Positions 6,101 through 23,593 of a DNA stretch of 64,000 nucleotides are shown one piece after another; within the stretch, counting starts at the first letter, position 1, and each line of letters starts with the position of its first letter. A program made the position numbers and the translations under genes. The notes under the pieces were generated by a model. It was given only the letters and a program-made list of their open reading frames with translations, was not told where the DNA came from and ran no database searches. The stretch comes from Macrostomum hystrix (taxonomy: Eukaryota; Animalia; Platyhelminthes): the NCBI GenBank assembly GCA_950097015.1, contig CATNEN010000024.1:4712001-4776000 (forward strand), read 5' to 3'.

Positions 6101-8615
6101 TGACTGCTTATTCATTTTTATATTATATTTTCCCTATTTGTTGAATTCAATGATCGACTCAGTTCGTTTGTTCGATTCCACTGTTCTAAGAATTCTAATT
6201 CTAAGTATTAGTTCGATTCCACTGTCGATTTTAAGTATTCGCTCGATTCCATTGACATCGATTCTAAGTATTAGTTTAATTTCACTGGCGTTTATAAACA
6301 TAGGTAATGTTAGAATGAATTATTTGAGTAGATATTGATCAGTGTACACTGCATTTATAAAGTAGTGGTGCTAATGTTTGTAAAGCTTGTCAGTGTACAA
6401 GGATGTTTGAAGCAGGCTAGAAATACTCTGAATGAAGCGCTTGCTTAAATCGCGTGGCTCGACACGTGAACAAAATTTTGGAGTAGTTTCGATAAAGTGC
6501 TTTCGTGAGTGGTTGTCCCTACACCCACTCACTAGCCGACGCCTAAGTGCCAATGCCCTACCTTCGTCGTTCACTTAGTTCGGTTGGGCTGTAAGCGGCT
6601 ATTAAAATAAGAAGAGAATTATTAATTACTTTTTTGCAACAACGAATGGCAGTTGCCTAGTTCCAGTCAGGGCTCTCTCTCTTTCTCTCTCTGTCTCTGT
6701 GGTGAGCTGCCGCCTTTGTGTATGTAGAGACCTAAGCATACGCTTGAACTGCTAGAGTAGCCGCCTCATAAATGCCCAACTACTATTTAGAGACGACGAG
6801 AAGTAGAAATGTAATTGAGACATTTTAAGTGGATATTACAGATTGAGAATGCTAGGTGTGAATTATTTGTAGGATGCCATTGTCCATTCGGCTTTTTTGA
6901 CTGATGTACTGCTAATTACAGCATTTTTGCATGGTTATGATCATATTATTTTTACTATTAAAACTGAAGCTCGCATTCTTAATAGTACTTCAAAGAAGAG
7001 ATTTTGAAAGTACATTCTCCTGCGCTGACACCCGCAGCTCCCGCGGCGCCAGTCAACTGGATCCAGGGTGACCTACTGGGCCAGGGCGCATTCGGCAAGG
7101 TGTACAAATGCCACGATCAGGACTCCGGGCGACTGTGCGCTATGAAGGTTGTCCAGCTGGACGTTAGCCAGGATCCCGCTACTAGTCGGGAAGTGAAAGC
7201 GTTGGAAGTTGAAATTCAACTGCTTAAGAATTTATCGCACGAGAGAATAGTGCAATACCTGGGCTGTCATCAAGACTCGCACCGGCTCTGCATCTTCATG
7301 GAGTACATGGACTGCGGCAGCGTACGCGATGAGATCAAGAAATACGGCCCGGTCAAAGAGATCTTAGCGAGAAAGTACACCAGAATGGTGCTGGAGGGCC
7401 TTCGCTTTCTACACAGCAATATTATTGTGCACAGGGATATTAAAGGTAAGACTTGCTTCAGCTTTAGTTCTTGATCCCTATTTTATAACTGGCTGCAGTC
7501 CTAGTTAACTTCCAGTTTCTTCCAAATTATTTGCTTGAGTCAGACCGCGCTTCTAAACCCTCAACTAAGGTGATGCAACCCTTCAGTCCTACCACCTTCG
7601 AAATCCAAACACAAGTAATTTTTTCGCCTCTAAATCTTCATTTGAGTCATTTCTTCCCTCCAAATCCTCATCGGAGTCATATCTTCCCTCCAAATCCTCA
7701 TCGGAGTCATATCTTCCCTCCAAATCCTCATCCGAGTCATATCTTCCCTCCAAACCCCTTTTGAGTAATTTCTCCCCTTCAAACCCTTTTTGAGTAATTT
7801 CTCCACTCAAAATTCTTATTTGAGTCTAATCTTCCCTGAAAAGTCCTTATCCCTAGATCTTTAGTGTCTCGCAAATGAAATGCAGTGCGCGAGAAAGCGT
7901 AAATTTATTTATTAGTCAAACAGATCTTAAATAGCGCTTCAGAGCGTGGGGAGGTGCGCGTAAGGTGGCGAGAGTCCGTAACCCCCCGGCTTAGCGAGCC
8001 GGTGGGTCGGGTGCACCCACCCCCCCCAGCCAGGCAGCCCGGGGTTTGAGTGCATATGCACCCAGAGTCGCGCCGCGTGCAGACCTGGCCGCCACAGATC
8101 CTTAAATCAGACCATTCTTCTAAATACTCGCTCGAGTCTATCCCCATAAATAGCTTCCTTTGTTTCATTGCCCAGACTTCCAAACGCACTCCAACCGAAT
8201 TCCAGGCGCCAACATCCTGAAGGACAGTCAAGGCAACGTCAAGCTATCCGACTTTGGCGCAGCGAAGCGCCTTAAAACCCTGCAATCTGCCGTGTCCACC
8301 ACCTTCGCTGGCACCGCGCCCTACATCGCTCCGGAGGTGATTCGCGGCAAGAAATTCGAACGCAAAGCGGATATCTGGTCGTTGGGATCAACCGTGGTTG
8401 AATTTCTCACTGGCAATCCGCCCTACTATCACCTGGAAAATGCCGCCTGCGTGATCTACAGGATAGTCAGCGATCAACAGGTTGACTACAGCCTGCCAGC
8501 TGGCGTTACTGAAACTGCCAAACAGTTCATTGACGCCTGCTTCACTCACATTGTGGAACAGAGGCCGGAAGCTGAAAACCTGTTGCGTCATCGCTTCTGC
8601 ACCGAAGCACTTTAG
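3170..8615 (+). CDS. MAP3K2/MAP3K3: MAP kinase kinase kinase MEKK2/3-like (PB1 + Ser/Thr kinase), 4 coding exons, 546 aa
   Basis: Exons 3170-3530, 5603-6064, 7038-7445 and 8206-8615 join in frame through GT-AG introns (all phase 1; 1641 nt). PB1 domain ([11 protein letters not shown]...SQEDLD...SLRLLL) and MEKK2/3 linker motifs ([26 protein letters not shown]). Kinase motifs: [38 protein letters not shown]. Confidence 0.93.
3678..5580. repeat. 30-bp minisatellite with 32-bp variants, about 60 units, MAP3K intron 1
   Basis: Unit attctgattccaagaatcccaatattgagc; ends about 22 nt before the exon-2 acceptor. Confidence 0.97.
7620..7850. repeat. 30-bp minisatellite, MAP3K intron 3
   Basis: Unit gagtcatatcttccctccaaatcctcatcg with degenerate flanking units. 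Confidence 0.85.
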
Positions 8616-9012
8616 CTGCCCCCAAATCGATTTGCGAGCTCTTGGTGTCTCGCGGCCCTTGATTCATGATCCCCCTGTTCCTAAATTGCTTCTCCCATCT
8701 TTCGTGCTTGTTTATTCTATTTATTACCTATTGTTAGTCATCCTTTGCAGCCCGTCACTTGTTGTTTAAAATTTGCTGTGTACAATTGTTTATCCATGTT
8801 TCTCACTACCTCCACCAGAGTGAGTCAGAACTAATCAAGTGTTTAATATAGCTTTATTTGCTTTGTGATATTAAGCCAATGTGATGGTTCTTGTGGTAAC
8901 CTTTCATTGTGCCCTGTGTGCGCGATGCTTTTTGCATTAATTTATTCGTTTTTTTCTGTCATTTTTTTACAAGTATTTCTCTGCCTTTGCCCTCAGTTTT
9001 AATACAAATATT

Positions 9013-9261
9013 CACTGGCCTAAGACCAGCCGACCCTCACTCTCTTACCCCAATGTACACTGGCCTAAGACCAGCCGACCCTCACTCTCTTACCCCAATG
9101 TACACTGGCCTAAGACCAGCCGACCCTCACTCTCTTACCCCAATGTACGCTGGCCTGAGACCAACCGACCCTCACTCTCTTACCCCAATGTACACTGGCC
9201 TGAGACCAGCCGACCCTCACTCTCTTACCCCAATGTACACTGGCCTAAGACCAACCGACCC
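9013..9261. repeat. 45-bp minisatellite, about 5.5 units
   Basis: Unit cactggcctaagaccagccgaccctcactctcttaccccaatgta. Confidence 0.95.
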
Positions 9262-9973
9262 TTAGCCAACAAGCCAATGGATAACCTGCCAACCATTACC
9301 ATCACTCTCTTACCCCACAGTACACACTGGCTTAGGAACAGCCAAGTCTAAATGAACAAACAGGAAATTAGTTTATTTTCGATCTCGTTTTGACAAGTAT
9401 TGTTTGATTAATGTACATAAGTGTTTAATATGCTCATATTAGAGTTGTACTGCACCAGGTTCTTATTAATGTTAATAGCTTTAATCTATTAAATTTATTA
9501 TTTATTCAAATTTTGTAAATAGGAATTCCACGCTGTTTCAGAACTGCCTGTAGCATTCTGTCTCGCCTTATTGAAATTGAAGCTTTAAACTAAATTGCAA
9601 ATTTTCCACCACAGGCGCCCTTGGTTTTTTGCAGCCACCCACCCAATTGGCCAAGTTGACATTGCGTAGCTGGCTGCTTTGTTTATTCTTTAATACTTCT
9701 TTGTGGGTTTGTCGCCCATCGTTTAAATGCTAACCGAATGCAATGTAATGAGTTAGCTCTCGCTCTCTGCTTAGCCGCTCTATATTTCTAACTGTTCTCA
9801 GTTGTCAAGTGCGGTTTCTGATTTAAATGGGATCTGCCACGTGACTTTTTTCGGGTCTTTAATAATGCCTTTTCGTTCTGTGTTTGATGCCAGCTCAAAT
9901 ATTATCATTTTGGTTGTTGTCAGTTGACTGTTGTCAGTCAAGTCTGAGTCGCGTTCCTGTTAACCCCACCAAT

Positions 9974-10533
9974 CTCACCCGAATGTACATTCTCTCTCTC
10001 TCAATCAGGCTTCACCCACCTCACCCGAATGTACATTCTCTCTCTCTCAATCAGGCTTCACCCACCTCACGCGAATGTACATTCTCTCTCTCTCTCAATC
10101 AGGCTTCACCCACCTCACCCGAATGTACATTCTCTCTCTAAATCAGGCTTCACCCACCTCACGCGAATGTACATTCTCTCTCTCAATCAGGCTTCACTCA
10201 CCTCACCCGAATGTACATTCTCTCTCTAAATCAGGCTTCACCCACTCACCCGAATGTACATTCTCTCTCTAAATCAGGCTGCACCCACTCACCCGAATGT
10301 ACATTCTCTCTCTCAATCAGGCTGCACCCACTCACCCGAATGTACATTCTCTCTCTAAATCAGGCTTCACCCACCTCACGCGAATGTACATTCTCTCTCT
10401 CAATCAGGCTTCACTCACCTCACCCGAATGTACATTCTCTCTCTCAATCAGGCTTCACCCGCCTCACCCGAATGTACATTCTCTCTCTCTCAATCAGCCT
10501 TCACCCACCTCACCCGAATGTACATTCTCTCTC
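9974..10533. repeat. 40-46-bp minisatellite with a variable internal (TC)n tract
   Basis: Unit cccgaatgtacattc(tc)n-aatcaggcttcacccacctca. Confidence 0.95.
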
Positions 10534-11486
10534 AGAAAATAACATCCACCCCACCCAGTGGGTAAATCAACTCATCAAGTATCTAAGTACGTTCTAGTAT
10601 GTGTGTGAGATATTAAAAAGAATAGATAACTTGTGCTTTGAAATTATTTATTTATGAGTTTTTGCAACACTACTATTCAATTTCCTGGCGTGCCTTTAAA
10701 TGTCGACCATGAAAGGTTTTTAGTATGCGACAGTGCTTCAAACCCTGTTAAATTTTGTTGTGACAGTAGATTTCACTCGTCAGCACTACTGCTAGTAACT
10801 CGGCTGTGCAGCGCTGTTCTCGAGGCCTCGCAACCTCGCCAGTTTTTTATTTAGACTTCCCTGTCTAATTGGCCTGTCACTTTATAAATAGGCAGACATT
10901 CCCAGTTTTTTTCTATAACATTTTTATTTACTGTATTCCAATATGGCTGTGGTTAGCTTTGGTTTACCCGGCGCTGCCCAAATCTAGCAATTGTTTATCT
11001 GTTCTCTATTAAAATTTCATCAATTCCATTTTAGAAAGCTGCTCAGAATATTTCTCTGCACTGTTTTGTTAGCCTTTTGTACTTTTAGCGTACAAATGAA
11101 ACGATTTTCTACAGTTCGTACTTTACTATTTGCTGTGACGAGTTGACAGTTTTGTTTGCCTCGAAATAACTAATGTTTGTATGCAGCCCGTATATTCAAA
11201 GCCTTACTAATTGTGTGCCTATTTAATTACTACTAATTATCACCTAATAACTAAACATTTTTATACCAATCGTGAAATTATTTCTTCTTTTTCTAAGAAG
11301 CCAATTGCACGTTTCTCCCCTTACTGTTCTCACAGTGCTATGTTGTTTGCCTTTTTCAGTTTTTTAACTGTTTGTTCTGACTTTCATATTTACGCCATTA
11401 CAGCTTCACGTCCGTGACCTTTGTGTAGTTGCTGCTGTGTTCAGCTTCCTCGAAATAGTTAATTTAGAATCTTGTCTACTCGTCCA

Positions 11487-12266
11487 CTCACCCTAGAGCT
11501 TACGCACAGCAATCCAGACCAACCCACAACCCCCTCACCCTAGAGCGTACGCACAGCAATCCAGACCAACCCCCAACCCCCTCACCCTAGAGCGTACGCA
11601 CAGCGATCCAGACCAACCCCCAACCCCCTCACCCTAGAGCGTACGCACAGCGATCCAGACCAACCCCCAACCCCCTCACCCTAGAGCGTACACACAGCGA
11701 TCCAGGCCAACCCCCTCACACTAGAGCGTACGCACAGCGATCCAGACCAACCCCCAACCCCCTCACCCTAGAGCGTACGCACAGCGATCCAGACCAACCC
11801 CCAACCCCCTCACCCTAGAGCGTACGCACAGCGATCCAGACCAACCCCCAACCCCCTCACCCTAGAGCGTACACACAGCGATCCAGGCCAACCCCCTCAC
11901 ACTAGAGCGTACGCACAGCGATCCAGACCAACCCCCAACCCCCTCACCCTAGAGCGTACGCACAGCGATCCAGACCCACCCCCAACCCCCTCACCCTAGA
12001 GCGTACGCACAGCGATCCAGACCAACCCCCAACCCCCTCACCCTAGAGCGTACACACAGCGATCCAGGCCAACCCCCTCACACTAGAGCGTACGCACAGC
12101 GATCCAGACCAACCCCCAACCCCCTCACCCTAGAGCGTACGCACAGCAATCCAGACCAACCCCCAACCCCCTCACCCTAGAGCGTACGCACAGCGATCCA
12201 GACCAACCCCCAACCCCCTCACCCTAGAGCGTACGCACAGCGATCCAGATCAACCCACAACCACCT
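11487..12266. repeat. 47-bp minisatellite with a 181-bp higher-order period
   Basis: Unit accctagagcgtacgcacagcgatccagaccaacccccaaccccctc; a 40-bp variant (tccaggcc) occurs at 11701, 11882 and 12063. Confidence 0.95.
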
Positions 12267-12994
12267 CGCCACAAGGATAAATTTCAATCGAGATAGATCT
12301 TTTATCAGCTGACACAGCTGCAGCTGGACTAATGTATTTATGCACTTAGTAGTAACTACATAAGACCGTAGTTACCTGGCTTATCTATCAAGCAATCTTT
12401 CATGCTCCGTCGTCCTTCTTTTTGCTTGGGTTAAACAAAAACCTCGCACAATATTGAAAAGGCGTCTTCGGACTAACTGAATGACCCTGGCGTTAGTCCA
12501 TCTGTCATATCATATTTCCCCCATTCTTTGAGCTGCCATTGCCATTCATAACTCCATCGCTGCTGTGTTCATTTGATATCCCAATGCGAGATGCGCCCAT
12601 TGTATTGTGATTGATTTTCTATCAGCGCAGTGCGTGGCTTTTCTTAAGCTAGTTTTTGTTTTTTTTCACTGCCGCTCACTCTGTGATCTCTATCTCCTGA
12701 TAGAAAATTTTTTGTTGCTGCATGCGCCCGTGTACCTGCAAGTACAATTACTATTTGTTCTGCATGGCAATGTTTAGTTAAAAATATTATTTTTGTAGGC
12801 TAAAGAGAGATTTTCGTTGCTACTATATGTGATATTGTTTAATGTCTTAGGATAAAAATCTGCGTATGCACTTTTACTTGGCCTCTTTACTGTCACACGC
12901 TTCTAATAAGATTTTTTATAAATCAAAATTTCACTCTACTGGAAGCACAGAACCAAAATGTGCTTCTTTTTCACGATCACTATCAACAGGTGCA

Positions 12995-13780
12995 TGCACA
13001 CGGCACTAACGATCAACAACCCCACGCCAATGTACACACGGCACTCCCGATCAACAACCCCACGCCAATGTACACACGGCACTCCCGATCAACAACCCTA
13101 CGCCAATGTAGACACGCACTCCCGATCAACAACCCCACGCCAATGTACACACGGCACTCCCGATCAACAACCCTACGCCAATGTACACACGGCACTCCCG
13201 ATCAACAACCCCACGCCAATGTACACACGGCACTCCCGATCAACAACCCTACGCCAATGTAGACACGCACTCCCGATCAACAACCCCACGCCAATGTACA
13301 CACGGCACTCCCGATCAACAATCCCACGCCAATGTACACACGGCACTCCCGATCAACAACCCTACGCCAATGTAGACACGCACTCCCGATCAACAATCCC
13401 ACGCCAATGTACACACGGCACTCCCGATCAACAACCCCACGCCAATGTACACACGGCACTCCCGATCAACAACCCTACGCCAATGTAGACACGCACTCCC
13501 GATCAACAACCCTACGCCAATGTAGACACGCACTCCCGATCAACAACCCCACGCCAATGTACACACGGCACTAACGATCAACAACCCCACGCCAATGTAC
13601 ACACGGCACTAACGATCAACAACCCCACACCAATGTAGACTTGAAACTCCCGATCAACAACCCCACGCCAATGTACACACGGCACTCCCGGTCAACAACC
13701 CCACGCCAATGTACACACGGCACTCCCGATCAACAACCCCACGCCAATGTAGACATGGAACTCCCGATCAACAACCCCAA
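12995..13780. repeat. 38/36-bp minisatellite
   Basis: Unit cccacgccaatgtacacacggcactcccgatcaacaac. Confidence 0.95.
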
Positions 13781-14785
13781 TGTAATGCAATCCTGAATCA
13801 ATCTTTACTACAGTACTATTAACGCAGCTAAAATAGTGCACAGCGCTCTGGCAGAGTAAAATTTCGTTGATACTTGTAAATTCTAGAAACAAAGTTTTTA
13901 TTTTAAAACTACTCTTTATCGATCAGCTCATCCCTAGGGAGATCAGTTTAGTATACTGCGAAACTTCTGATAATTGTTGGTATTACACTGCAAGTCGTTT
14001 ATAGCTCTTACGTAGACATGCCTCCTTTAATATACTATGCCCTGACAATATTTTTTCTGCATCTGTTATGGCCGGGCCTAGCAAAATGTGTGAGGATTTA
14101 TTTCCATATTTTCATATCTGATGTTAGGAAGATAAGCAGCTATCTGCGTTTTCTCCAGTCTCGTTTCAATGTTCCCCATTAATACCTTAATGCTTTTGTA
14201 ACGAGGTACATATTGATTACCACACGTACAGTACTGTAAGTGCAATATCAAAAACATGTTCACTGCCTGCGCCTGTGTCTAAAAAGATTCTCTTCGCTCC
14301 TCGCCGCTCGCCCTTCCTCCTTCGCCTATGGGTCCATCGCGCTGTTAGATTGCATTGCCACTGTGTGGACTGCGTCAAAATGATTAACATTTAAAGGTAT
14401 GCACCACCGTGCCCACTCTACCGTGTTAGCAGATATTCATCATTGATTATTAGAACTTTTTAGCAGAACTCGCATATTTAAGTTTGAAATATTCTGTGGA
14501 TTTTTTAATGTAAAGTTGCATATCTCTCTATATTTGTTTATTTATTTATTCAACCTTTGCGTGCCCATTCATTTGTTTGCAATCGCATATAGCTGCTCAT
14601 GAAGATTAAACACTAAATACTAAATATATTATTAACGAAAATATCACTTTCAAGCATCAGTTTTTCTGTCTGGAATCTAAAAGTGTCTAGTGCCCAGTTT
14701 TAATTTTATTATTTGCTTTCCTGCTTTTAGAAAAAAAATGTGTTCATATTCTTAGTACGAAGCGGCCTTTTTTCAAGGTATTTTA

Positions 14786-15815
14786 AGCCTGAGTTTCACA
14801 TCAAAGATGCCGCCTCCCTTCACTAGTCTAGACTATTATAAACCTGAGTTTCACATCAAAGATGCCGCCTCCCTTCACTAGTCTAGACTATTATAAACCT
14901 GAGTTTCACATCAAAGATGCCGCCTCCCTACACTAGTCTAGACTATTATAAACCTGAATTTCGCATCAAAGATGCCGCCTCCCTTCACTAGTCTAGACTA
15001 TTATAAACCTGAGTTTCACATCAAAGATGCCGCCTCCCTTCACTAGTCTAGACTATTATAAACCTGAATTTCACATCAAAGATGCCGCCTGCCTCACTAA
15101 ACTAGACTATTATAAACCTGAATTTCACATCAAAGATGCCGCCTCCCTTCACTAGTCTAGACTATTATAAACCTGAATTTCACATCAAAGATGCCGCCTG
15201 CCTCACTAGACTAGACTATTATAAACCTGAATTTCACATCAAAGATGCCGCCTCCCTTCACTAGTCTAGACTATTATAAACCTGAATTTCACATCAAAGA
15301 TGCCGCCTGCCTCACTAGACTAGACTATTATAAACCTGAATTTCGCATCAAAGATGCCGCCTCCCTTCACTATAGTCTGAACTTTTTAAAGCCAGAATTC
15401 CACATCAAAGATGCCGCCTGTCTTCATTAGTCTAGACTTTTATAAGCCAGAATTCCACATCAAAGATTCCGCCTCCCATCACTAGACTGGACTTTTATAA
15501 GCCTGTATTTGACATCAAAGATGCCGCCTCCCTCCACTAGTCTAGACTATTATAAACCTGAATTTCACATCAAAGATGCCGCCTCCCTCCACTAGTCTAG
15601 ACTATTATAAACCTGAATTTCACATCAAAGATGCCGCATGCCTCACTAGACTAGACTATTATAAACCTGAATTTCGCATCAAAGATGCCGCCTCCCTTCA
15701 CTAGTCTGAACTTTTTAAAGCCAGAATTTCACACCAAAGATGCCGCCTCCCTCCACTAGTCTAGACTATTATAAACCTGAATTTCACATCATAGATGCCG
15801 CCTGCCTTTACTAGA
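14786..15815. repeat. 55/54-bp minisatellite ending about 90 nt upstream of the LTV1 acceptor
   Basis: Unit cactagtctagactattataaacctgagtttcacatcaaagatgccgcctccctt, about 18 copies. Confidence 0.95.
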
Positions 15816-15887
15816 CCGAACCATCTCAAAGCCTTCGTAGCCATTACAAAACCAAGTTTTGTCAGTAACTAACAAGAGCATAGTTCA

Positions 15888-15904
15888 TTGTTTAATATTT
15901 TCAG
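15888..15904 (+). promoter_or_regulatory. 3' splice acceptor opening the LTV1 ORF (candidate SL trans-splice site)
   Basis: tgtttaatattttcag is followed immediately by CCG AAG CGC AAG in the LTV1 frame. Confidence 0.7.
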
Positions 15905-17800
15905 CCGAAGCGCAAGGCAAAGTACATAGATAAGAAGAGCGCGGTGACTTGGCATCTATTCGACCGCGCTCAGGATGACGTCATGTGCGGCGACGCCGCC
16001 ATGCCCCAGGTGGTCATGGTGGAAGTGGAACAAGGTCGCCGACTGAAGGAGCGGCGAAAGTACGGCATCTATTATGAGGACGACTACGACTATTTGCAGC
16101 ATCTGAAGCCTAGAAGCGGCGCGGCGATTGTTGTCGAGAAAGGCGACGACGACGACGAGGATGAGGAGGACGACGATGACGAAGACTCATTCTGGCAGGA
16201 TCAGGACGACGGCGAGAAGTCGATTTCATCAAAGGCGACAGCCAACGCAGCGAAATCTAGTTTCACCCTTCCGGTTGACTTGCTTCCAAATGAACCACCA
16301 ACGCTGGCCGAAGTTCTTGACGATGGCGACGGTGATGCTAACGGCGACTTCTATGACGCTGAAATCGCCGAAGCGATTGCCGCAGCTGAAGCCGGAGATG
16401 CCGATGACGATGATTCGGAGGGTGAAGGCGAAATCGAAAGCGACATCGGCGAAGTGGTCGAAGAAGGCGACATTGAGGACGACTTTGTGGCATTGGCCAA
16501 CGCTCCGGACGAAAGCGGCAGCCGCAGGCGACCTCTTGTCGGTGCCGGCGCCGCCGCCGCATCGAAGCGCGACATTTTTAGTCGATTCTTTGACGAAGCC
16601 GACGACGAGGATGAAGCCGATGAAGCAGCGTCCGATGAGGAGGAGGAGGTGGTGGTTGCGAAGCCGACCGCCTCTGTGACCACCAGCCGGCGAGGTCGGC
16701 CGCTCACCTACCACGAGGAGGTCATCGAAGACCAGTTCGACCGATTGCTGCGCGAATTTCAACGCGACTCCGCCAACGCGGCCGCGGCAGATTGCGAAAA
16801 TCCGGACAATGACGATCCCGGCGCGGTTGACGACGACTGTGGCTCCGTCATGACCAAGTCGCTCTACCAGGTGCGTGCCTGTTGATACTCATAGATGGTC
16901 ATTGATGGTTGATCCGTATGGTAGATAAATAGATAGAAATTGCACAGCCACGACTATGCGCTGCGCTTCCAAAGGTTGTGTACAAATTTTCAGTCCATGG
17001 ACTGGAAGGCACACCAATCTAACTTTCTACCCTCGCTAGTTCTGCTACCCAAGTTACAGCTGGGGGGGACTTCGTACTAGGAATTTTTGTACTTTTTATC
17101 AGACGATAATACGATAATTCGGCGCGAATTCAAATTAACTAATGTTAGAACTAAAATTTTTCCAATCGCTTTCGCCCAGGTTCTTGAGCGGCACGACAAA
17201 GAACTGGCCTCAGCTGCCGTCACCAAGGAGACGCTTGACGCCGGCCGTTTGCCAGCAAGTGAGACGCTGCGCATTCTGGCCGCCAGTGGCAGCTATGGCA
17301 ACGAAGAGGACGACGAAGACGCTTCCTCATTGGACACCGACGACGAGCTGAGCCTCTGGGGTCCGATGGCGGCGGGGGCGGCGGCTCCAAAGCTGGTGGT
17401 GCCGTTGACGTCAGCCGGCGGCGACGGTGTCCGCAGTGGACGAAACGTCCCAGTTCTGTTGGACATTAGAGATCGCCGGAAAGCAGTTGGCAAGGAAGAG
17501 GGCGAGGACATTGCTGAAGAAGACGAGGAGGACGAGGAGGAGGAAGACAACGCTGATAGCAATGAAGCAGACAGTGTCGCGACTAAAGACTGCCATTCAG
17601 CTGCGGCGGCGGCAGCTCTGGCAGCCCGTCTGGCCGGAGTGACCGACAAGCGAGAACGCAAGCGCATTGTGAAGGAGTACCAGCGTGCAAGGCGGCAGCA
17701 GAAGAAGCAGACTCGACTGTGCTTCGGCCGGGCCAAGCAGGAGCTCAATGTTGCAACACGCAATGATCCGTTTCAGCAGGGTCGGGTCTTAAAACTCTGA
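15905..17800 (+). CDS. LTV1: LTV1 pre-40S ribosome biogenesis factor; 2 coding exons, initiator Met not found in the genomic sequence
   Basis: Exons 15905-16870 and 17180-17800 (phase 0 intron). N-terminus PKRKAKYIDKKSAVTWHLFDRAQDD and ERRKYGIYYEDDYDYLQHLK match the LTV1 family. Basic C-terminus KRERKRIVKEYQRARRQQKK...LKL. The ORF opens directly after the acceptor ttttcag (AG at 15903-15904). Confidence 0.9.
16942..17067 (-). mobile_element. SINE family 1, degenerate 3' fragment in the LTV1 intron
   Basis: gcacagcc...tgcg...ttcagtccatggactgg...cagctgg aligns with the body of the 23659-23967 copy. Confidence 0.55.
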
Positions 17801-18213
17801 CTATGCTGCTAGTAGTAGCGGTTCTGGGCAATAAGATATTTTCTTAAAAAATTACTCCAGCTGTCCCGCTTGTTTTTTGTCCTTAATTGTTCTGCGCGCA
17901 CAATTCATTTTTTAACAATTTGGAGCTGAGGCAAATTAATGAGTGCAGATTAGAAATAAATTTCAATTTGGCGCTTCGAGTCTCTCTGTTAGAGTTGAAC
18001 GCATTTTTTCTGTGTGAGATCAGTGGAAAATTTCTGCTATCTCTTCTCCGCTTTGTCTTTATTATTTTTTGACGGCAAAAATTTAATTCCTTAATTGGGG
18101 TTATTTTTTAAGTTATTTTGTTATACACAAAGCAGAGACATTAATTTTGGGTGTTTTAACTGACAAGCCAAACAATCAGTTTATTTAATGATATACTCGC
18201 AATCATGATGATC

Positions 18214-18360
18214 TAGCCTACTGGTCAAGGCGTCGGACTCGCGACTTGGAGGTCGAAGGTTCGATTCCTTACTCGACTGGAACAATTTCTGTACTTTAGC
18301 AAGACACTTAACTCCGCATTAATTCAGTTCACCGAGCTGTTAAATGGGTTACCAGCATCA
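18214..18360 (+). mobile_element. SINE family 1, 3'-truncated copy
   Basis: TAGCCTACTGG...GGTTCGATTCC head plus gcaagacacttaactccgcatt...cagttcaccgagctgttaaatgggttaccagcatca, homologous to the 23659-23967 copy. Confidence 0.8.
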
Positions 18361-18722
18361 TTTTTTCACAAAAAAAATTGAAACATTCCTATCTCGCTTG
18401 TGCATTTTCCTGAAAATCTGCCTTTAATTTATTTTCCAAGAAACGGAGTGTCCTGTCCTTCTTCTAGTAGTCATTGTGACACAGTTCCATATAACCTAGA
18501 TACGCGTAAAATTATTGAGATAGAAAATCTGTGGTCATTGATGTAAAAATTATCAAATGTTTAAATTTTATTTATATACTCGTAGCTTCAATGTCGCTTT
18601 CAATTCAACTTTTACAATTGTCTGGCGTTTGGACCACAAACGATTCATGCAATACAAGGCGCATTAAAAACCGCCAGATACAAAAGCGGTAAATAGCGAA
18701 GTAAAGCTTAAGCCAAGAAAAA

Positions 18723-19991
18723 ATGATCCAACGGAAGGTCAGCCGGCAAAACGACCGAGTTGTGTTCTCTGAAATCCTGTCCCGCGGCCTGCAGGTTCTG
18801 GTTGACTCGCCGTGCAACAAGGTGCTCGACCGGCTATACATTGGCAGCATCGATACACTGTCGCCCTACAACCTGACGCTGTACAACATCCGCCAGATTG
18901 TCAGCGTCAGCGACTGCGGCGAAGGCTTGGAAGAGTTGGTGCACACCAGCATCCACAATCCGGTCACAGGAGAGGACCTGCCGGTGCTGCAGTACTATGT
19001 CGGCGATTATGCCAAGTCGCAGATCAGTCTGCACTTTGATAGCTGCGCCCTATTCATTCACTATGGCCGGGTGCACGATAAGAATGTGTTGATTCACTGC
19101 AACCAGGTGCGTCGCATTTCTACTATGCACGCTAAAACTTATAAGTCAAGTCAATAAGCCTAGTTCATACACCCCTATACACTAATTAACGCTGCGCCTG
19201 AGGGCCGCTTGCCACTTCGTCTCCGTAGGTGACCACCGAAGACGGAGATGATGCAGGCACATTCGGGTGACTTGGTGATAAAGTTTGAAGGTCTGGCAAG
19301 GTCTTTAAAGAAAAATCTGACCTTCAGCCAGAGCAGTTGAATATCTCGACGGTCTGAAGTGCTGGCGATTTGATTCTTGTTTAAGATTAAGATGCGCAGC
19401 AAAAATTTGGCCCGTGTTCTTGAGTTTCGTGTGCTCTGTTCGTTGTTGCTGTCAATCGTCATCATAGCCATGTGGTGTCAGATTCCTATGTATTGGGTAC
19501 TCACAAAAGCCCTTTAGCCAATCCTATTCTGCCACAATTAAAATAGCCCCTAATAGTTTTATAGTTCAGCAGAAGTCAATGTTTTGCATTTCTTCAGGGT
19601 GTCTCACGATCGCCGGCCATAGCCACAGCTTACCTGATGTGCATAGCTGACAAAATGAATCTAATCGAGTGAGTTGGCGTCACTTTTTCCCAATGAGAAA
19701 TATTGACAACTGGTTCTGGTGTTTTGATGCGCGAAAATGAATTAGAATTGTTACACTATAAAACTTGACAGAATTATTCAAGCGCTAAAGGTGATGCGCA
19801 ATAAAGTCAACATCAACACAGCATTTGTGAGTCAATTATTGGACTTCAAAAGCAATTGGGCCAGTAAGGTTTGGTCCAATATCAAATACGAGTTGGGCGA
19901 CTGGTGGAAGGTCGGCCTGGACTGCAACCGGCTCGAGCGTTACTCGCGGAGATTCACAGAGCGCGGCATGCAGCTGCAGGAGTTGATTTGA
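18723..19991 (+). CDS. Atypical dual-specificity phosphatase, DUSP22/DUSP15-like, 3 exons, 224 aa
   Basis: Exons 18723-19106, 19598-19668 and 19772-19991 join in frame (675 nt). The catalytic loop HCNQ|GVSRS is rebuilt across intron 1. Also KVLDRLYIG, the general-acid Asp (VGDYAKSQISLHFD), AYLM and NINTAFVSQL. Confidence 0.85.
19160..19445. mobile_element. Third, partial and rearranged copy of the MITE in DUSP intron 1
   Basis: gtaggtgaccaccgaagacggagatgatgcaggcacatt...gaatatctcgacggtctgaag...ttggcccgtgttcttgagtttcgtgtgc is shared with the other two copies; termini are absent. Confidence 0.75.
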
Positions 19992-22696: not shown

Positions 22697-23593
22697 CTAG
22701 GTGCGCGGCCGCACGGAATTGTAGTGCTCACCGGAGCGCATCAGGTGCCGATGAAAGGTCACTGTCAGAGCGGCCTCTTCGCCGCCGTCGTCAACAAATT
22801 CTTCGCCAACGAGAAGGTCCGGGGGGCCGGCCTGCAGGACACGAATCGGCAGTCGGAGGGCCTCGCTGAGTGCCCGCAGCTCCATCTGGCCGCCCCATTC
22901 AGACGAAGACTCGACCAGATCAGCATAGGCCTCGAGTTCGACGCCTTCGTCTAGGAAGGGCGCGTAGTGGCCGGGACTGGCCCGAATGGCTTCAGCGGCC
23001 AGCCGGCGCAGTCCGGAAACAGATTCGTGCCGGCCGCGCCGCTGTCCGAGCTGGTGCTGCACAGCGGCGTACAGGCAGCTTCCATCGGCCGGGACCTCCT
23101 GCAAATCGAGGCCCAGTGAGGCCAGGCGCTCGCGAATGCGAGCCAATTCAACGGCGCCTTCGCTGGGCCGTTCAGCTTCGTCGATAGCTCGACGCTCCGC
23201 CTCCTGGCGTTGCCTGGCTGCGGCTTCTGCTTTCTTCTCGCGTCGCTTGGCAGCTTTGGACTTCTTCTGATGCTGCTGCTGCGGCAGCGCGTCAGATTCC
23301 TCGTCAGATTTGCCCGCGGCGTCATCCTCAGCTTCGGGCTCAATCGTCGTTTCCTCGCTCTTCTTCTTTTCGGCATTGTCGCCCAGACGCAGACAGCCGG
23401 CGCGGAGTTCGGCCGCCTCCACAGCCTGGCGCTCGTCAAGCTCGGCCTGGAAGCGGGCAGACTCGGCCTGCACCTCTCTGGCGCGCCGTTTGTCACCCTT
23501 CGGCACGGTCTTTTTTAATCGCTGAAGCTCGGCCTGCAGAGCCTTCTGCTCCAGCTTGTGCCTGGCTAGCAGCTCCTCCTCCTCCGGCAGAGA
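22697..23593 (-). CDS. OTUD6B: OTU-domain deubiquitinase OTUD6B-like; single coding exon, initiator Met not found in the genomic sequence
   Basis: N-terminal EEELLARHKLEQKALQ...KKTVPKGDKRR matches the OTUD6 family. OTU catalytic motifs VPADGSCLYAAVQHQL, WGGQMELRALS and HYNSV. The frame opens after the acceptor ctcttcag (minus strand, exon starts 23593); there is an in-frame stop at 23621-23623 and no in-frame ATG. Confidence 0.88.
   Translation of the reverse strand, partial: SLPEEEELLARHKLEQKALQAELQRLKKTVPKGDKRRAREVQAESARFQAELDERQAVEAAELRAGCLRLGDNAEKKKSEETTIEPEAEDDAAGKSDEESDALPQQQHQKKSKAAKRREKKAEAAARQRQEAERRAIDEAERPSEGAVELARIRERLASLGLDLQEVPADGSCLYAAVQHQLGQRRGRHESVSGLRRLAAEAIRASPGHYAPFLDEGVELEAYADLVESSSEWGGQMELRALSEALRLPIRVLQAGPPDLLVGEEFVDDGGEEAALTVTFHRHLMRSGEHYNSVRPRT

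What the first reader, a model, noticed from the sequence alone, without database searches (positions are those of the whole stretch)
15888..15960. LTV1 lacks a genomic start codon: candidate for an SL-donated initiator AUG
Seen: the acceptor ttttcag is followed by codons P-K-R-K-A-K-Y-I-D-K-K in phase 0. I found no credible ATG|GT exon upstream; the strong donors at 14236, 14397 and 14778 have no in-frame ATG, and the only ATG|GT is a weak one at 8884. Established: LTV1 orthologues start MP+basic residues (human MPHRKKK), and flatworm spliced leaders end in AUG, which can act as the initiator Met. Inference: SL trans-splicing supplies Met1, making translation of this 40S assembly factor dependent on trans-splicing; 14.2-15.9 kb, including the 55-bp array, would be the outron.
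Basis: partly seen in the sequence, partly recalled or inferred. Interest (0 to 1): 0.75.

Follow-up and report, generated by a model that had tools for sequence, protein, structure and literature searches.

The report
Spliced leader supplies LTV1 start codon
In this Macrostomum flatworm the ribosome-assembly gene LTV1 has no start codon in its own DNA, and RNA data show a trans-spliced leader ending in AUG joined in frame before its first codon, a mechanism already known in flatworms.

Summary

- **Gene:** the LTV1 reading frame (Pfam LTV, E 2.6e-13) opens at 15905, right after the acceptor ttttcag. An in-frame TAA lies three codons upstream and there is no genomic ATG.
- **RNA evidence:** in two public runs, contigs identical to the window lack the 309-nt GT..AG intron. 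They carry GCGAAGACTCAATTTATTGCAT+G directly in front of CCGAAGCGC. These 23 letters equal the last 23 of the published 35-nt Macrostomum lignano spliced leader, which ends in ATG.
- **Reading frame:** the mRNA reads ...TTGCATG|CCG AAG, giving M-P-K-R-K-A-K. This aligns residue for residue with vertebrate LTV1 (MPHRKKK).
- **Use of the leader AUG:** the next AUG in the mRNA is out of frame. The first 27 codons differ from M. lignano by 8 synonymous and 2 non-synonymous changes, so this segment is translated.
- **Conservation:** M. lignano LTV1 is deposited as "partial" and starts at the same PKRK.

Use of the leader AUG by ribosomes is inferred, not shown. The proposed outron extent (14.2-15.9 kb) is untested.

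The mechanism was shown in schistosomes (Cheng et al. 2006). This scan already confirmed it for CHMP6 and other genes elsewhere in this genome. LTV1 is therefore a well-documented new example, not a new kind.

The parts
15893..15895 (+). In-frame TAA stop three codons upstream of the first LTV1 codon. It closes the frame in genomic DNA.
15898..15904 (+). Trans-splice acceptor ttttcag (YTNCAG type). The final G coincides with the G of the leader's ATG in the contig alignment.
   Evidence: The loose end lies before 15904. The motif is as reported for M. lignano trans-splice sites (PMC8629364).
15905..16870 (+). LTV1 exon 1, codons 2-323 of the mature ORF (PKRKAKYIDKK...SLYQ). It has no ATG of its own at the 5' end.
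15975..15977 (+). First AUG after the leader AUG in the mRNA. It is out of frame (+1) and opens a 23-codon ORF, 8 nt ahead of the first internal in-frame AUG (15983).
16871..17179 (+). Single cis intron, GT..AG, 309 nt, phase 0. It is removed in contigs of all four runs.
   Evidence: joint 16866->17176 with cut +4. Sequence. The junction SLYQ|VLERH is the same in M. lignano P0001.
17180..17800 (+). LTV1 exon 2 coding part, with stop TGA at 17798-17800. The full ORF with the SL Met is 529 aa.
17801..17981 (+). 3' UTR with AATAAA at 17955-17960. The RNA contigs end at 17981 (X5) and 18027 (X6).
14779..15814 (+). 55-bp tandem array (18.9 copies) ending 90 nt before the acceptor. It is a candidate part of the outron, which was not tested.
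   Evidence: RNA contig depth is 0 at 15815-15901.

Best explanation
LTV1 of this Macrostomum species (not M. lignano) is transcribed as a pre-mRNA whose 5' part (the outron) is discarded. The roughly 35-nt spliced leader, which ends in AUG, is trans-spliced onto the acceptor at 15904/15905. The mature mRNA then reads SL...UUGCAUG|CCG AAG CGC. The leader's terminal AUG is the only in-frame start upstream of the conserved LTV1 N-terminus, and it yields a 529-aa protein MPKRKAKYIDKK.... Without trans-splicing no full-length LTV1 can be made. Shown here: the SL-exon junction, the frame, the lack of a genomic ATG, and the intron. Inferred: that ribosomes initiate at the SL AUG, by analogy with Schistosoma (Cheng et al. 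2006) and from sequence conservation.
For:: contigs of 1791 nt (X5, depth 102) and 1837 nt (X6, depth 91) match the window with 0 differences over 15904-16866 and 17176-17981/18027. They lack the intron. They carry the 22-letter loose end GCGAAGACTCAATTTATTGCAT before 15904. With the shared G, this equals the last 23 nt of the M. lignano SL CGGTCTCTTACTGCGAAGACTCAATTTATTGCATG (PMC8629364). No contig covers 15815-15901; an in-frame TAA lies just upstream; the SL AUG is the first AUG of the mRNA and opens a 529-aa ORF. The next AUG (15975) is out of frame with a 23-codon ORF. The first 27 codons differ from M. lignano by 8 synonymous and 2 non-synonymous changes. Pro at 15905 aligns with Pro2 of vertebrate LTV1 (MPHRKKK), so exactly one residue, Met1, is missing from the genome; three M. 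lignano paralogues are deposited as 'partial'; two start at PKRK and one three residues later at KAKF. That annotation set transcript 5' ends from SL-containing reads (PMC5730564). Literature: all reported flatworm SLs end in ATG (PMC12582326). In S. mansoni more than 40 cDNAs need the SL AUG (PMC9851317, citing Cheng et al. 2006).
Against: There is no protein-level or ribosome-profiling evidence. The SL AUG has a weak Kozak context (U at -3, C at +4), so some leaky scanning is possible. The 5' end is seen in two runs of a single study. Both are held as assembled contigs, which drop rare isoforms, so a minor cis-spliced or differently trans-spliced form cannot be excluded. The library type of those runs is not on record; RNA origin is deduced from intron removal and the SL. 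The contigs show only the last 23 nt of the SL.
Confidence: 0.85

Rival explanations
1. A small upstream cis-spliced exon, ending in or containing an in-frame ATG, provides Met1. The SL-bearing form would then be a minor or artefactual species.
For:: theoretical candidates exist. These are ATG|GT at 8884 and a phase-0 ATG-ORF at 14018-14089 ahead of a GTRAG donor. An earlier follow-up in this genome (s1-316733) found one claimed SL case that really had a tiny ATG exon.
Against:: the only contigs reaching the 5' end, in both runs and at depth about 90-100, carry the SL. No joint into 15905 from elsewhere was seen. Position 8884 lies just behind the upstream kinase gene's stop. The 14018-14089 peptide is hydrophobic and unlike any LTV1 N-terminus. 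Orthologues need exactly M before P.
Confidence: 0.04
2. Trans-splicing occurs, but the SL AUG is skipped. Translation would start at the internal Met at 15983 (or 16001/16016), giving LTV1 without its first 26 residues.
For: The SL AUG context is weak. GCCGCCATGC at 16001 is a strong Kozak site.
Against:: an out-of-frame AUG at 15975 precedes the internal ones. The 27 N-terminal codons show 8 synonymous against 2 non-synonymous differences from M. lignano; they align with the conserved N-terminus of animal LTV1, so they are under coding selection. The SL AUG was shown to initiate in Schistosoma (Cheng et al. 2006).
Confidence: 0.08
3. The SL-exon junction is an assembly chimera in the Logan contigs.
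For: The SL is shared by thousands of transcripts, and de Bruijn graphs can join repeats.
Against:: the same junction appears in two separately assembled runs. The contig stops 23 nt into the SL, where the k-mers become non-unique, as expected for a true junction. The junction falls exactly at a canonical YTNCAG acceptor and in frame. The M. lignano orthologue has its SL-read-defined 5' boundary at the same codon.
Confidence: 0.02

Closest known systems
Flatworm SL 3'-terminal AUG used as initiator methionine (Schistosoma mansoni; Cheng, Cohen, Ndegwa & Davis, J Biol Chem 2006; 'slORFs', PMC9851317)
   Same: The SL ends in ...UUGCAUG. It is trans-spliced directly in front of an ATG-less ORF, in frame, and supplies Met1 of a conserved protein.
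   Different: The species is different: a free-living macrostomorph rather than a parasitic trematode. The gene is LTV1. Initiation at the SL AUG is not shown experimentally here.
Macrostomum lignano SL trans-splicing (35-nt SL; Wasik 2015, Wudarski 2017, Ustyantsev & Berezikov 2021; M. cliftonense and M. hystrix, Wiberg 2023, PMC10468722)
   Same: The SL 3' 23 nt are identical. The acceptor is of the YTNCAG type. The target is a conserved housekeeping gene. Wiberg et al. already note that the SL probably contains the final ATG as a translation start codon.
   Different: Those papers do not list LTV1 or analyse SL-AUG dependence gene by gene. The M. lignano LTV1 entries are simply labelled 'partial'.
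Other SL-AUG candidates in this same genome found by this scan (CHMP6 confirmed; mt-TyrRS and thimet peptidase likely; OTUD6B in this window)
   Same: The same anatomy: an acceptor immediately before codon 2, with no genomic ATG.
   Different: The genes are different. I did not re-test those cases, except for a partial look at OTUD6B.

Membership tests
SL-donated initiator AUG (flatworm type) | The species has a spliced leader whose last three bases are AUG | tested here: met
   the loose end ...TTGCAT+G sits on RNA contigs identical to the window. It equals the 3' 23 nt of the M. lignano SL.
SL-donated initiator AUG (flatworm type) | The SL is joined at an AG acceptor so that its AUG is in frame with the ORF | tested here: met
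   ...GCATG|CCG AAG is in frame 0 and opens a 529-aa ORF.
SL-donated initiator AUG (flatworm type) | No genomic in-frame ATG is available to the mature mRNA upstream of the conserved N-terminus | tested here: met
   TAA at 15893-15895, three codons before the acceptor. The exon starts at the Pro codon. Pro aligns with Pro2 of orthologues.
SL-donated initiator AUG (flatworm type) | Ribosomes initiate at the SL AUG (protein or ribosome-footprint evidence) | not testable with these tools
   Indirect evidence only: 8 synonymous against 2 non-synonymous changes in codons 1-27 versus M. lignano, and the next AUG is out of frame.
LTV1 (Pfam PF04180, 40S assembly factor) | A significant match to the LTV profile above the curated cut-off | tested here: met
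   51 bits against a cut-off of 28, E 2.6e-13, profile positions 1-264 of 378.
LTV1 (Pfam PF04180, 40S assembly factor) | Sequence similarity to an experimentally characterised LTV1 | tested here: met
   human LTV1 in pre-40S structures (6g18_t and others), E 1.1e-11, covering the N-terminal 200 residues.
LTV1 (Pfam PF04180, 40S assembly factor) | A role in 40S subunit maturation | not tested
   Inferred from homology only.

The most novel reading that the evidence does not exclude
Dependence of LTV1 (and of neighbouring OTUD6B) on the leader's AUG is an evolutionarily fixed state. It would be kept at the very same codon in Macrostomum species whose proteins are only 71-77% identical. Production of a 40S-assembly factor would then be obligatorily gated by trans-splicing and by the SL/TMG-cap translation pathway, a possible regulatory coupling of ribosome biogenesis to SL supply.
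Probability: 0.25. Interest if true: 0.5.

Novelty: new member of a known kind. Interest (0 to 1): 0.3.

Why it matters
It gives a clean, RNA-backed example for gene annotation. In Macrostomum genomes, ORFs that open right after an acceptor without an ATG are complete genes whose Met1 comes from the leader. They should not be labelled "partial" or truncated to an internal Met. It also shows that the arrangement is conserved between two Macrostomum species for an essential ribosome-assembly factor. It does not reveal a new mechanism.

Tried and rejected
- **SL gene in the window:** I searched the window for the SL 3' 23-mer with up to 3 mismatches and found 0 hits. There is no SL gene or SL fossil here.
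- **Rfam:** the scan of 13800-18800 at E<=0.1 found nothing.
- **tRNA:** ARAGORN on 17800-18800 found none.
- **Older M. lignano contig:** I tried to fetch the ML2 contig behind UniProt A0A1I8I448 to read the true M. lignano acceptor. It is not on record.
- **Upstream laying of reads:** The transcription start and the outron therefore remain open.
- **Joined protein:** the exon 1 + exon 2 protein was not sent to any search tool. The exons were searched separately by reference, and the join was made only inside a script for ORF bookkeeping.
- **Big HMMER search and structure prediction:** neither was used. The family assignment was already clear.
- **Upstream ATG exon:** considered and rejected, see the rival explanations.

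Full report
**Observation**

The window reads ...gtttaatattttcag|CCG AAG CGC AAG GCA AAG TAC ATA GAT AAG AAG at 15898-15904|15905 onwards. Translating the same frame upstream gives ...FIV*YFQ|PKRKAKYIDKK, with a TAA at 15893-15895. The frame therefore cannot be opened by any contiguous genomic ATG.

Exon 1 (15905-16870, 322 codons) matches Pfam LTV PF04180 (51 bits, cut-off 28, E 2.6e-13). It also matches human LTV1 from pre-40S structures (6g18_t, E 1.1e-11).

The gene has one intron (16871-17179, GT..AG, phase 0). A second exon runs to the TGA at 17798-17800.

- ATGGT occurs once between 8600 and 15904, at 8884.
- The donors at 14236, 14397 and 14778 are as described.
It does not resemble any LTV1 N-terminus.

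**RNA evidence**

The run search returned eight runs from two studies. I laid four of them on 15815-18400.

In X5 and X6 (study P2) a single contig covers 15904-16866 and 17176-17981/18027 with zero differences. It is 1791 nt at depth 102 in X5 and 1837 nt at depth 91 in X6. It comes from the window's own species, and it is RNA because the 309-nt intron is cleanly removed (joint reported with cut +4, that is 16870->17180, GT..AG).

Both contigs carry a 22-letter loose end, GCGAAGACTCAATTTATTGCAT, immediately before 15904. The G at 15904 is shared between the genomic cag and the leader's ATG. The RNA therefore reads GCGAAGACTCAATTTATTGCATG|CCGAAGCGC.

These 23 letters are identical to the 3' end of the published 35-nt M. 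lignano spliced leader, CGGTCTCTTACTGCGAAGACTCAATTTATTGCATG (PMC8629364). SL sequences are reported as highly conserved in M. cliftonense and M. hystrix (PMC10468722).

No contig covers 15815-15901 in any run. Runs X1 and X2 (study P1) confirm the intron but do not reach the 5' end.

The window itself holds no copy of the leader.

**Does the leader AUG start the protein?**

In the mature mRNA (SL + exon 1 + exon 2) the SL AUG is the first AUG. It opens a 529-aa ORF, MPKRKAKYIDKK....

The next AUG (15975) is out of frame and opens a 23-codon ORF. It lies 8 nt ahead of the first internal in-frame AUG (15983).

The segment between the SL AUG and Met27 is conserved:
- Against the M. lignano orthologue, the first 27 codons carry 8 synonymous and 2 non-synonymous differences.
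- The segment aligns with the N-terminus of vertebrate LTV1, Pro at 15905 against Pro2 of MPHRKKK.

Exactly one residue, Met1, is missing from the genome, and the leader supplies it.

Initiation at the SL AUG itself is inferred. It rests on this conservation and on the schistosome precedent (Cheng et al. 2006, cited in PMC12582326 and PMC9851317). In S. mansoni the SL AUG is in frame in 28% of trans-spliced transcripts and is required by more than 40 cDNAs. The Kozak context of the SL AUG is weak (U at -3, C at +4), so some leaky scanning cannot be excluded.

**Comparison with M. lignano**

The best database relative is M. lignano BOX15_Mlig011660g4, which is 71% identical over exon 1. The window is therefore from another Macrostomum species.

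Three M. lignano paralogues are deposited as "partial". Two begin at PKRK and the third three residues later at KAKF. In that annotation, transcript 5' ends were set from SL-containing reads after trimming the leader (PMC5730564). The trans-splice site is thus at the same codon.

The intron position (SLYQ|VLERH) is also shared. So is the gene order PB1-kinase -> tandem arrays -> LTV1 -> dual-specificity phosphatase.

One oddity remains. In the Mlig_3_7 assembly all three copies read ...ctctttcTGCATG|CCGAAG. That gives no AG acceptor, and the last six bases equal the leader's last six.

A UniProt model of M. lignano LTV1, which I take to come from the older ML2 assembly, reads KFSFFQ|PKRK. This implies ...TTY CAR|CCG, a normal acceptor.

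Mlig_3_7 was polished with Pilon using RNA-seq mapped by STAR. I think leader bases were most likely written into the reference at this site. I could not fetch the ML2 contig to prove it. This does not touch the conclusion for the window, whose acceptor is canonical.

**Surroundings**

The upstream PB1-kinase gene, on the same strand, ends at 8615. The 7.3 kb up to LTV1 holds five C-rich tandem arrays totalling about 3.4 kb.

The M. lignano spacer also holds arrays. Their units differ but share a similar CCAATGTACA-like core.

Under the operon criterion of Ustyantsev & Berezikov (repeat-adjusted distance under 1 kb), the remaining ~3.9 kb argues against an operon, but only weakly.

**Second gene in the window**

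OTUD6B (23593..22700, minus strand; Pfam OTU E 8e-23) opens at cttcag|TCT CTG CCG without an ATG.

Its M. lignano orthologue is 77% identical and also "partial". It begins SPPEEE right after attgcag. This is the same pattern at the same codon.

**Known or new**

The mechanism is established in flatworms. Wiberg et al. 2023 remark that the Macrostomum leader probably contains the translation start codon.

This scan has already confirmed the same thing for CHMP6 and judged it likely for two other genes elsewhere in this genome. LTV1 is a new, well-supported member of a known kind.

**Verdict**

Confidence is about 0.95 for the RNA junction and about 0.85 for the full statement including initiation. 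Interest is modest.

Noticed in passing
L001:5990-6003, L002 and L003 at the same place (M. lignano GCA_002269645.1): All three M. lignano LTV1 copies read ...ctctttcTGCATG|CCGAAG. There is no AG acceptor, and the last 6 nt equal the SL's last 6. A UniProt model, apparently from the older ML2 assembly (A0A1I8I448), implies ...TTYCAR|CCG. Mlig_3_7 was Pilon-polished with RNA-seq, so leader bases may have been written into the reference at trans-splice sites. This might also bear on why only 9551 of 21754 SL sites showed the YTNCAG motif in PMC8629364.
   Followed up: partly
window 22700-23593 (- strand): OTUD6B-like gene (Pfam OTU) opens at cttcag|TCT CTG CCG with no genomic ATG. The M. lignano orthologue (77% identical, 'partial') starts at the same codon after attgcag. 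This is probably a second SL-AUG gene. No reads were laid on it.
   Followed up: partly
window 9013-15814; L001:402-5897: The spacer between the PB1-kinase gene and LTV1 is filled with C-rich tandem arrays in both species. Units are 38-55 bp here and 30-40 bp in M. lignano. The unit sequences differ but share a CCAATGTACA-like core. Synteny kinase -> arrays -> LTV1 -> DSP phosphatase is conserved.
   Followed up: partly
window 18200-18350: A short tRNA-like or SINE-like stretch (…ggtcaaggcgtcggactcgcgacttggaggtcgaaggttcgattcc…) has very high summed RNA contig depth (900-1400) from many short, 90-95% alike contigs. It is probably a dispersed repeat. ARAGORN and Rfam find nothing.
   Followed up: partly
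window 14779-15814: Each 55-bp unit of the array upstream of LTV1 contains ATGCCGCC, and the array carries 42-61-aa ORFs (MPPPFTSLDYYKPEFHIKDAA...). There is no sign that they are expressed or spliced.
   Followed up: no
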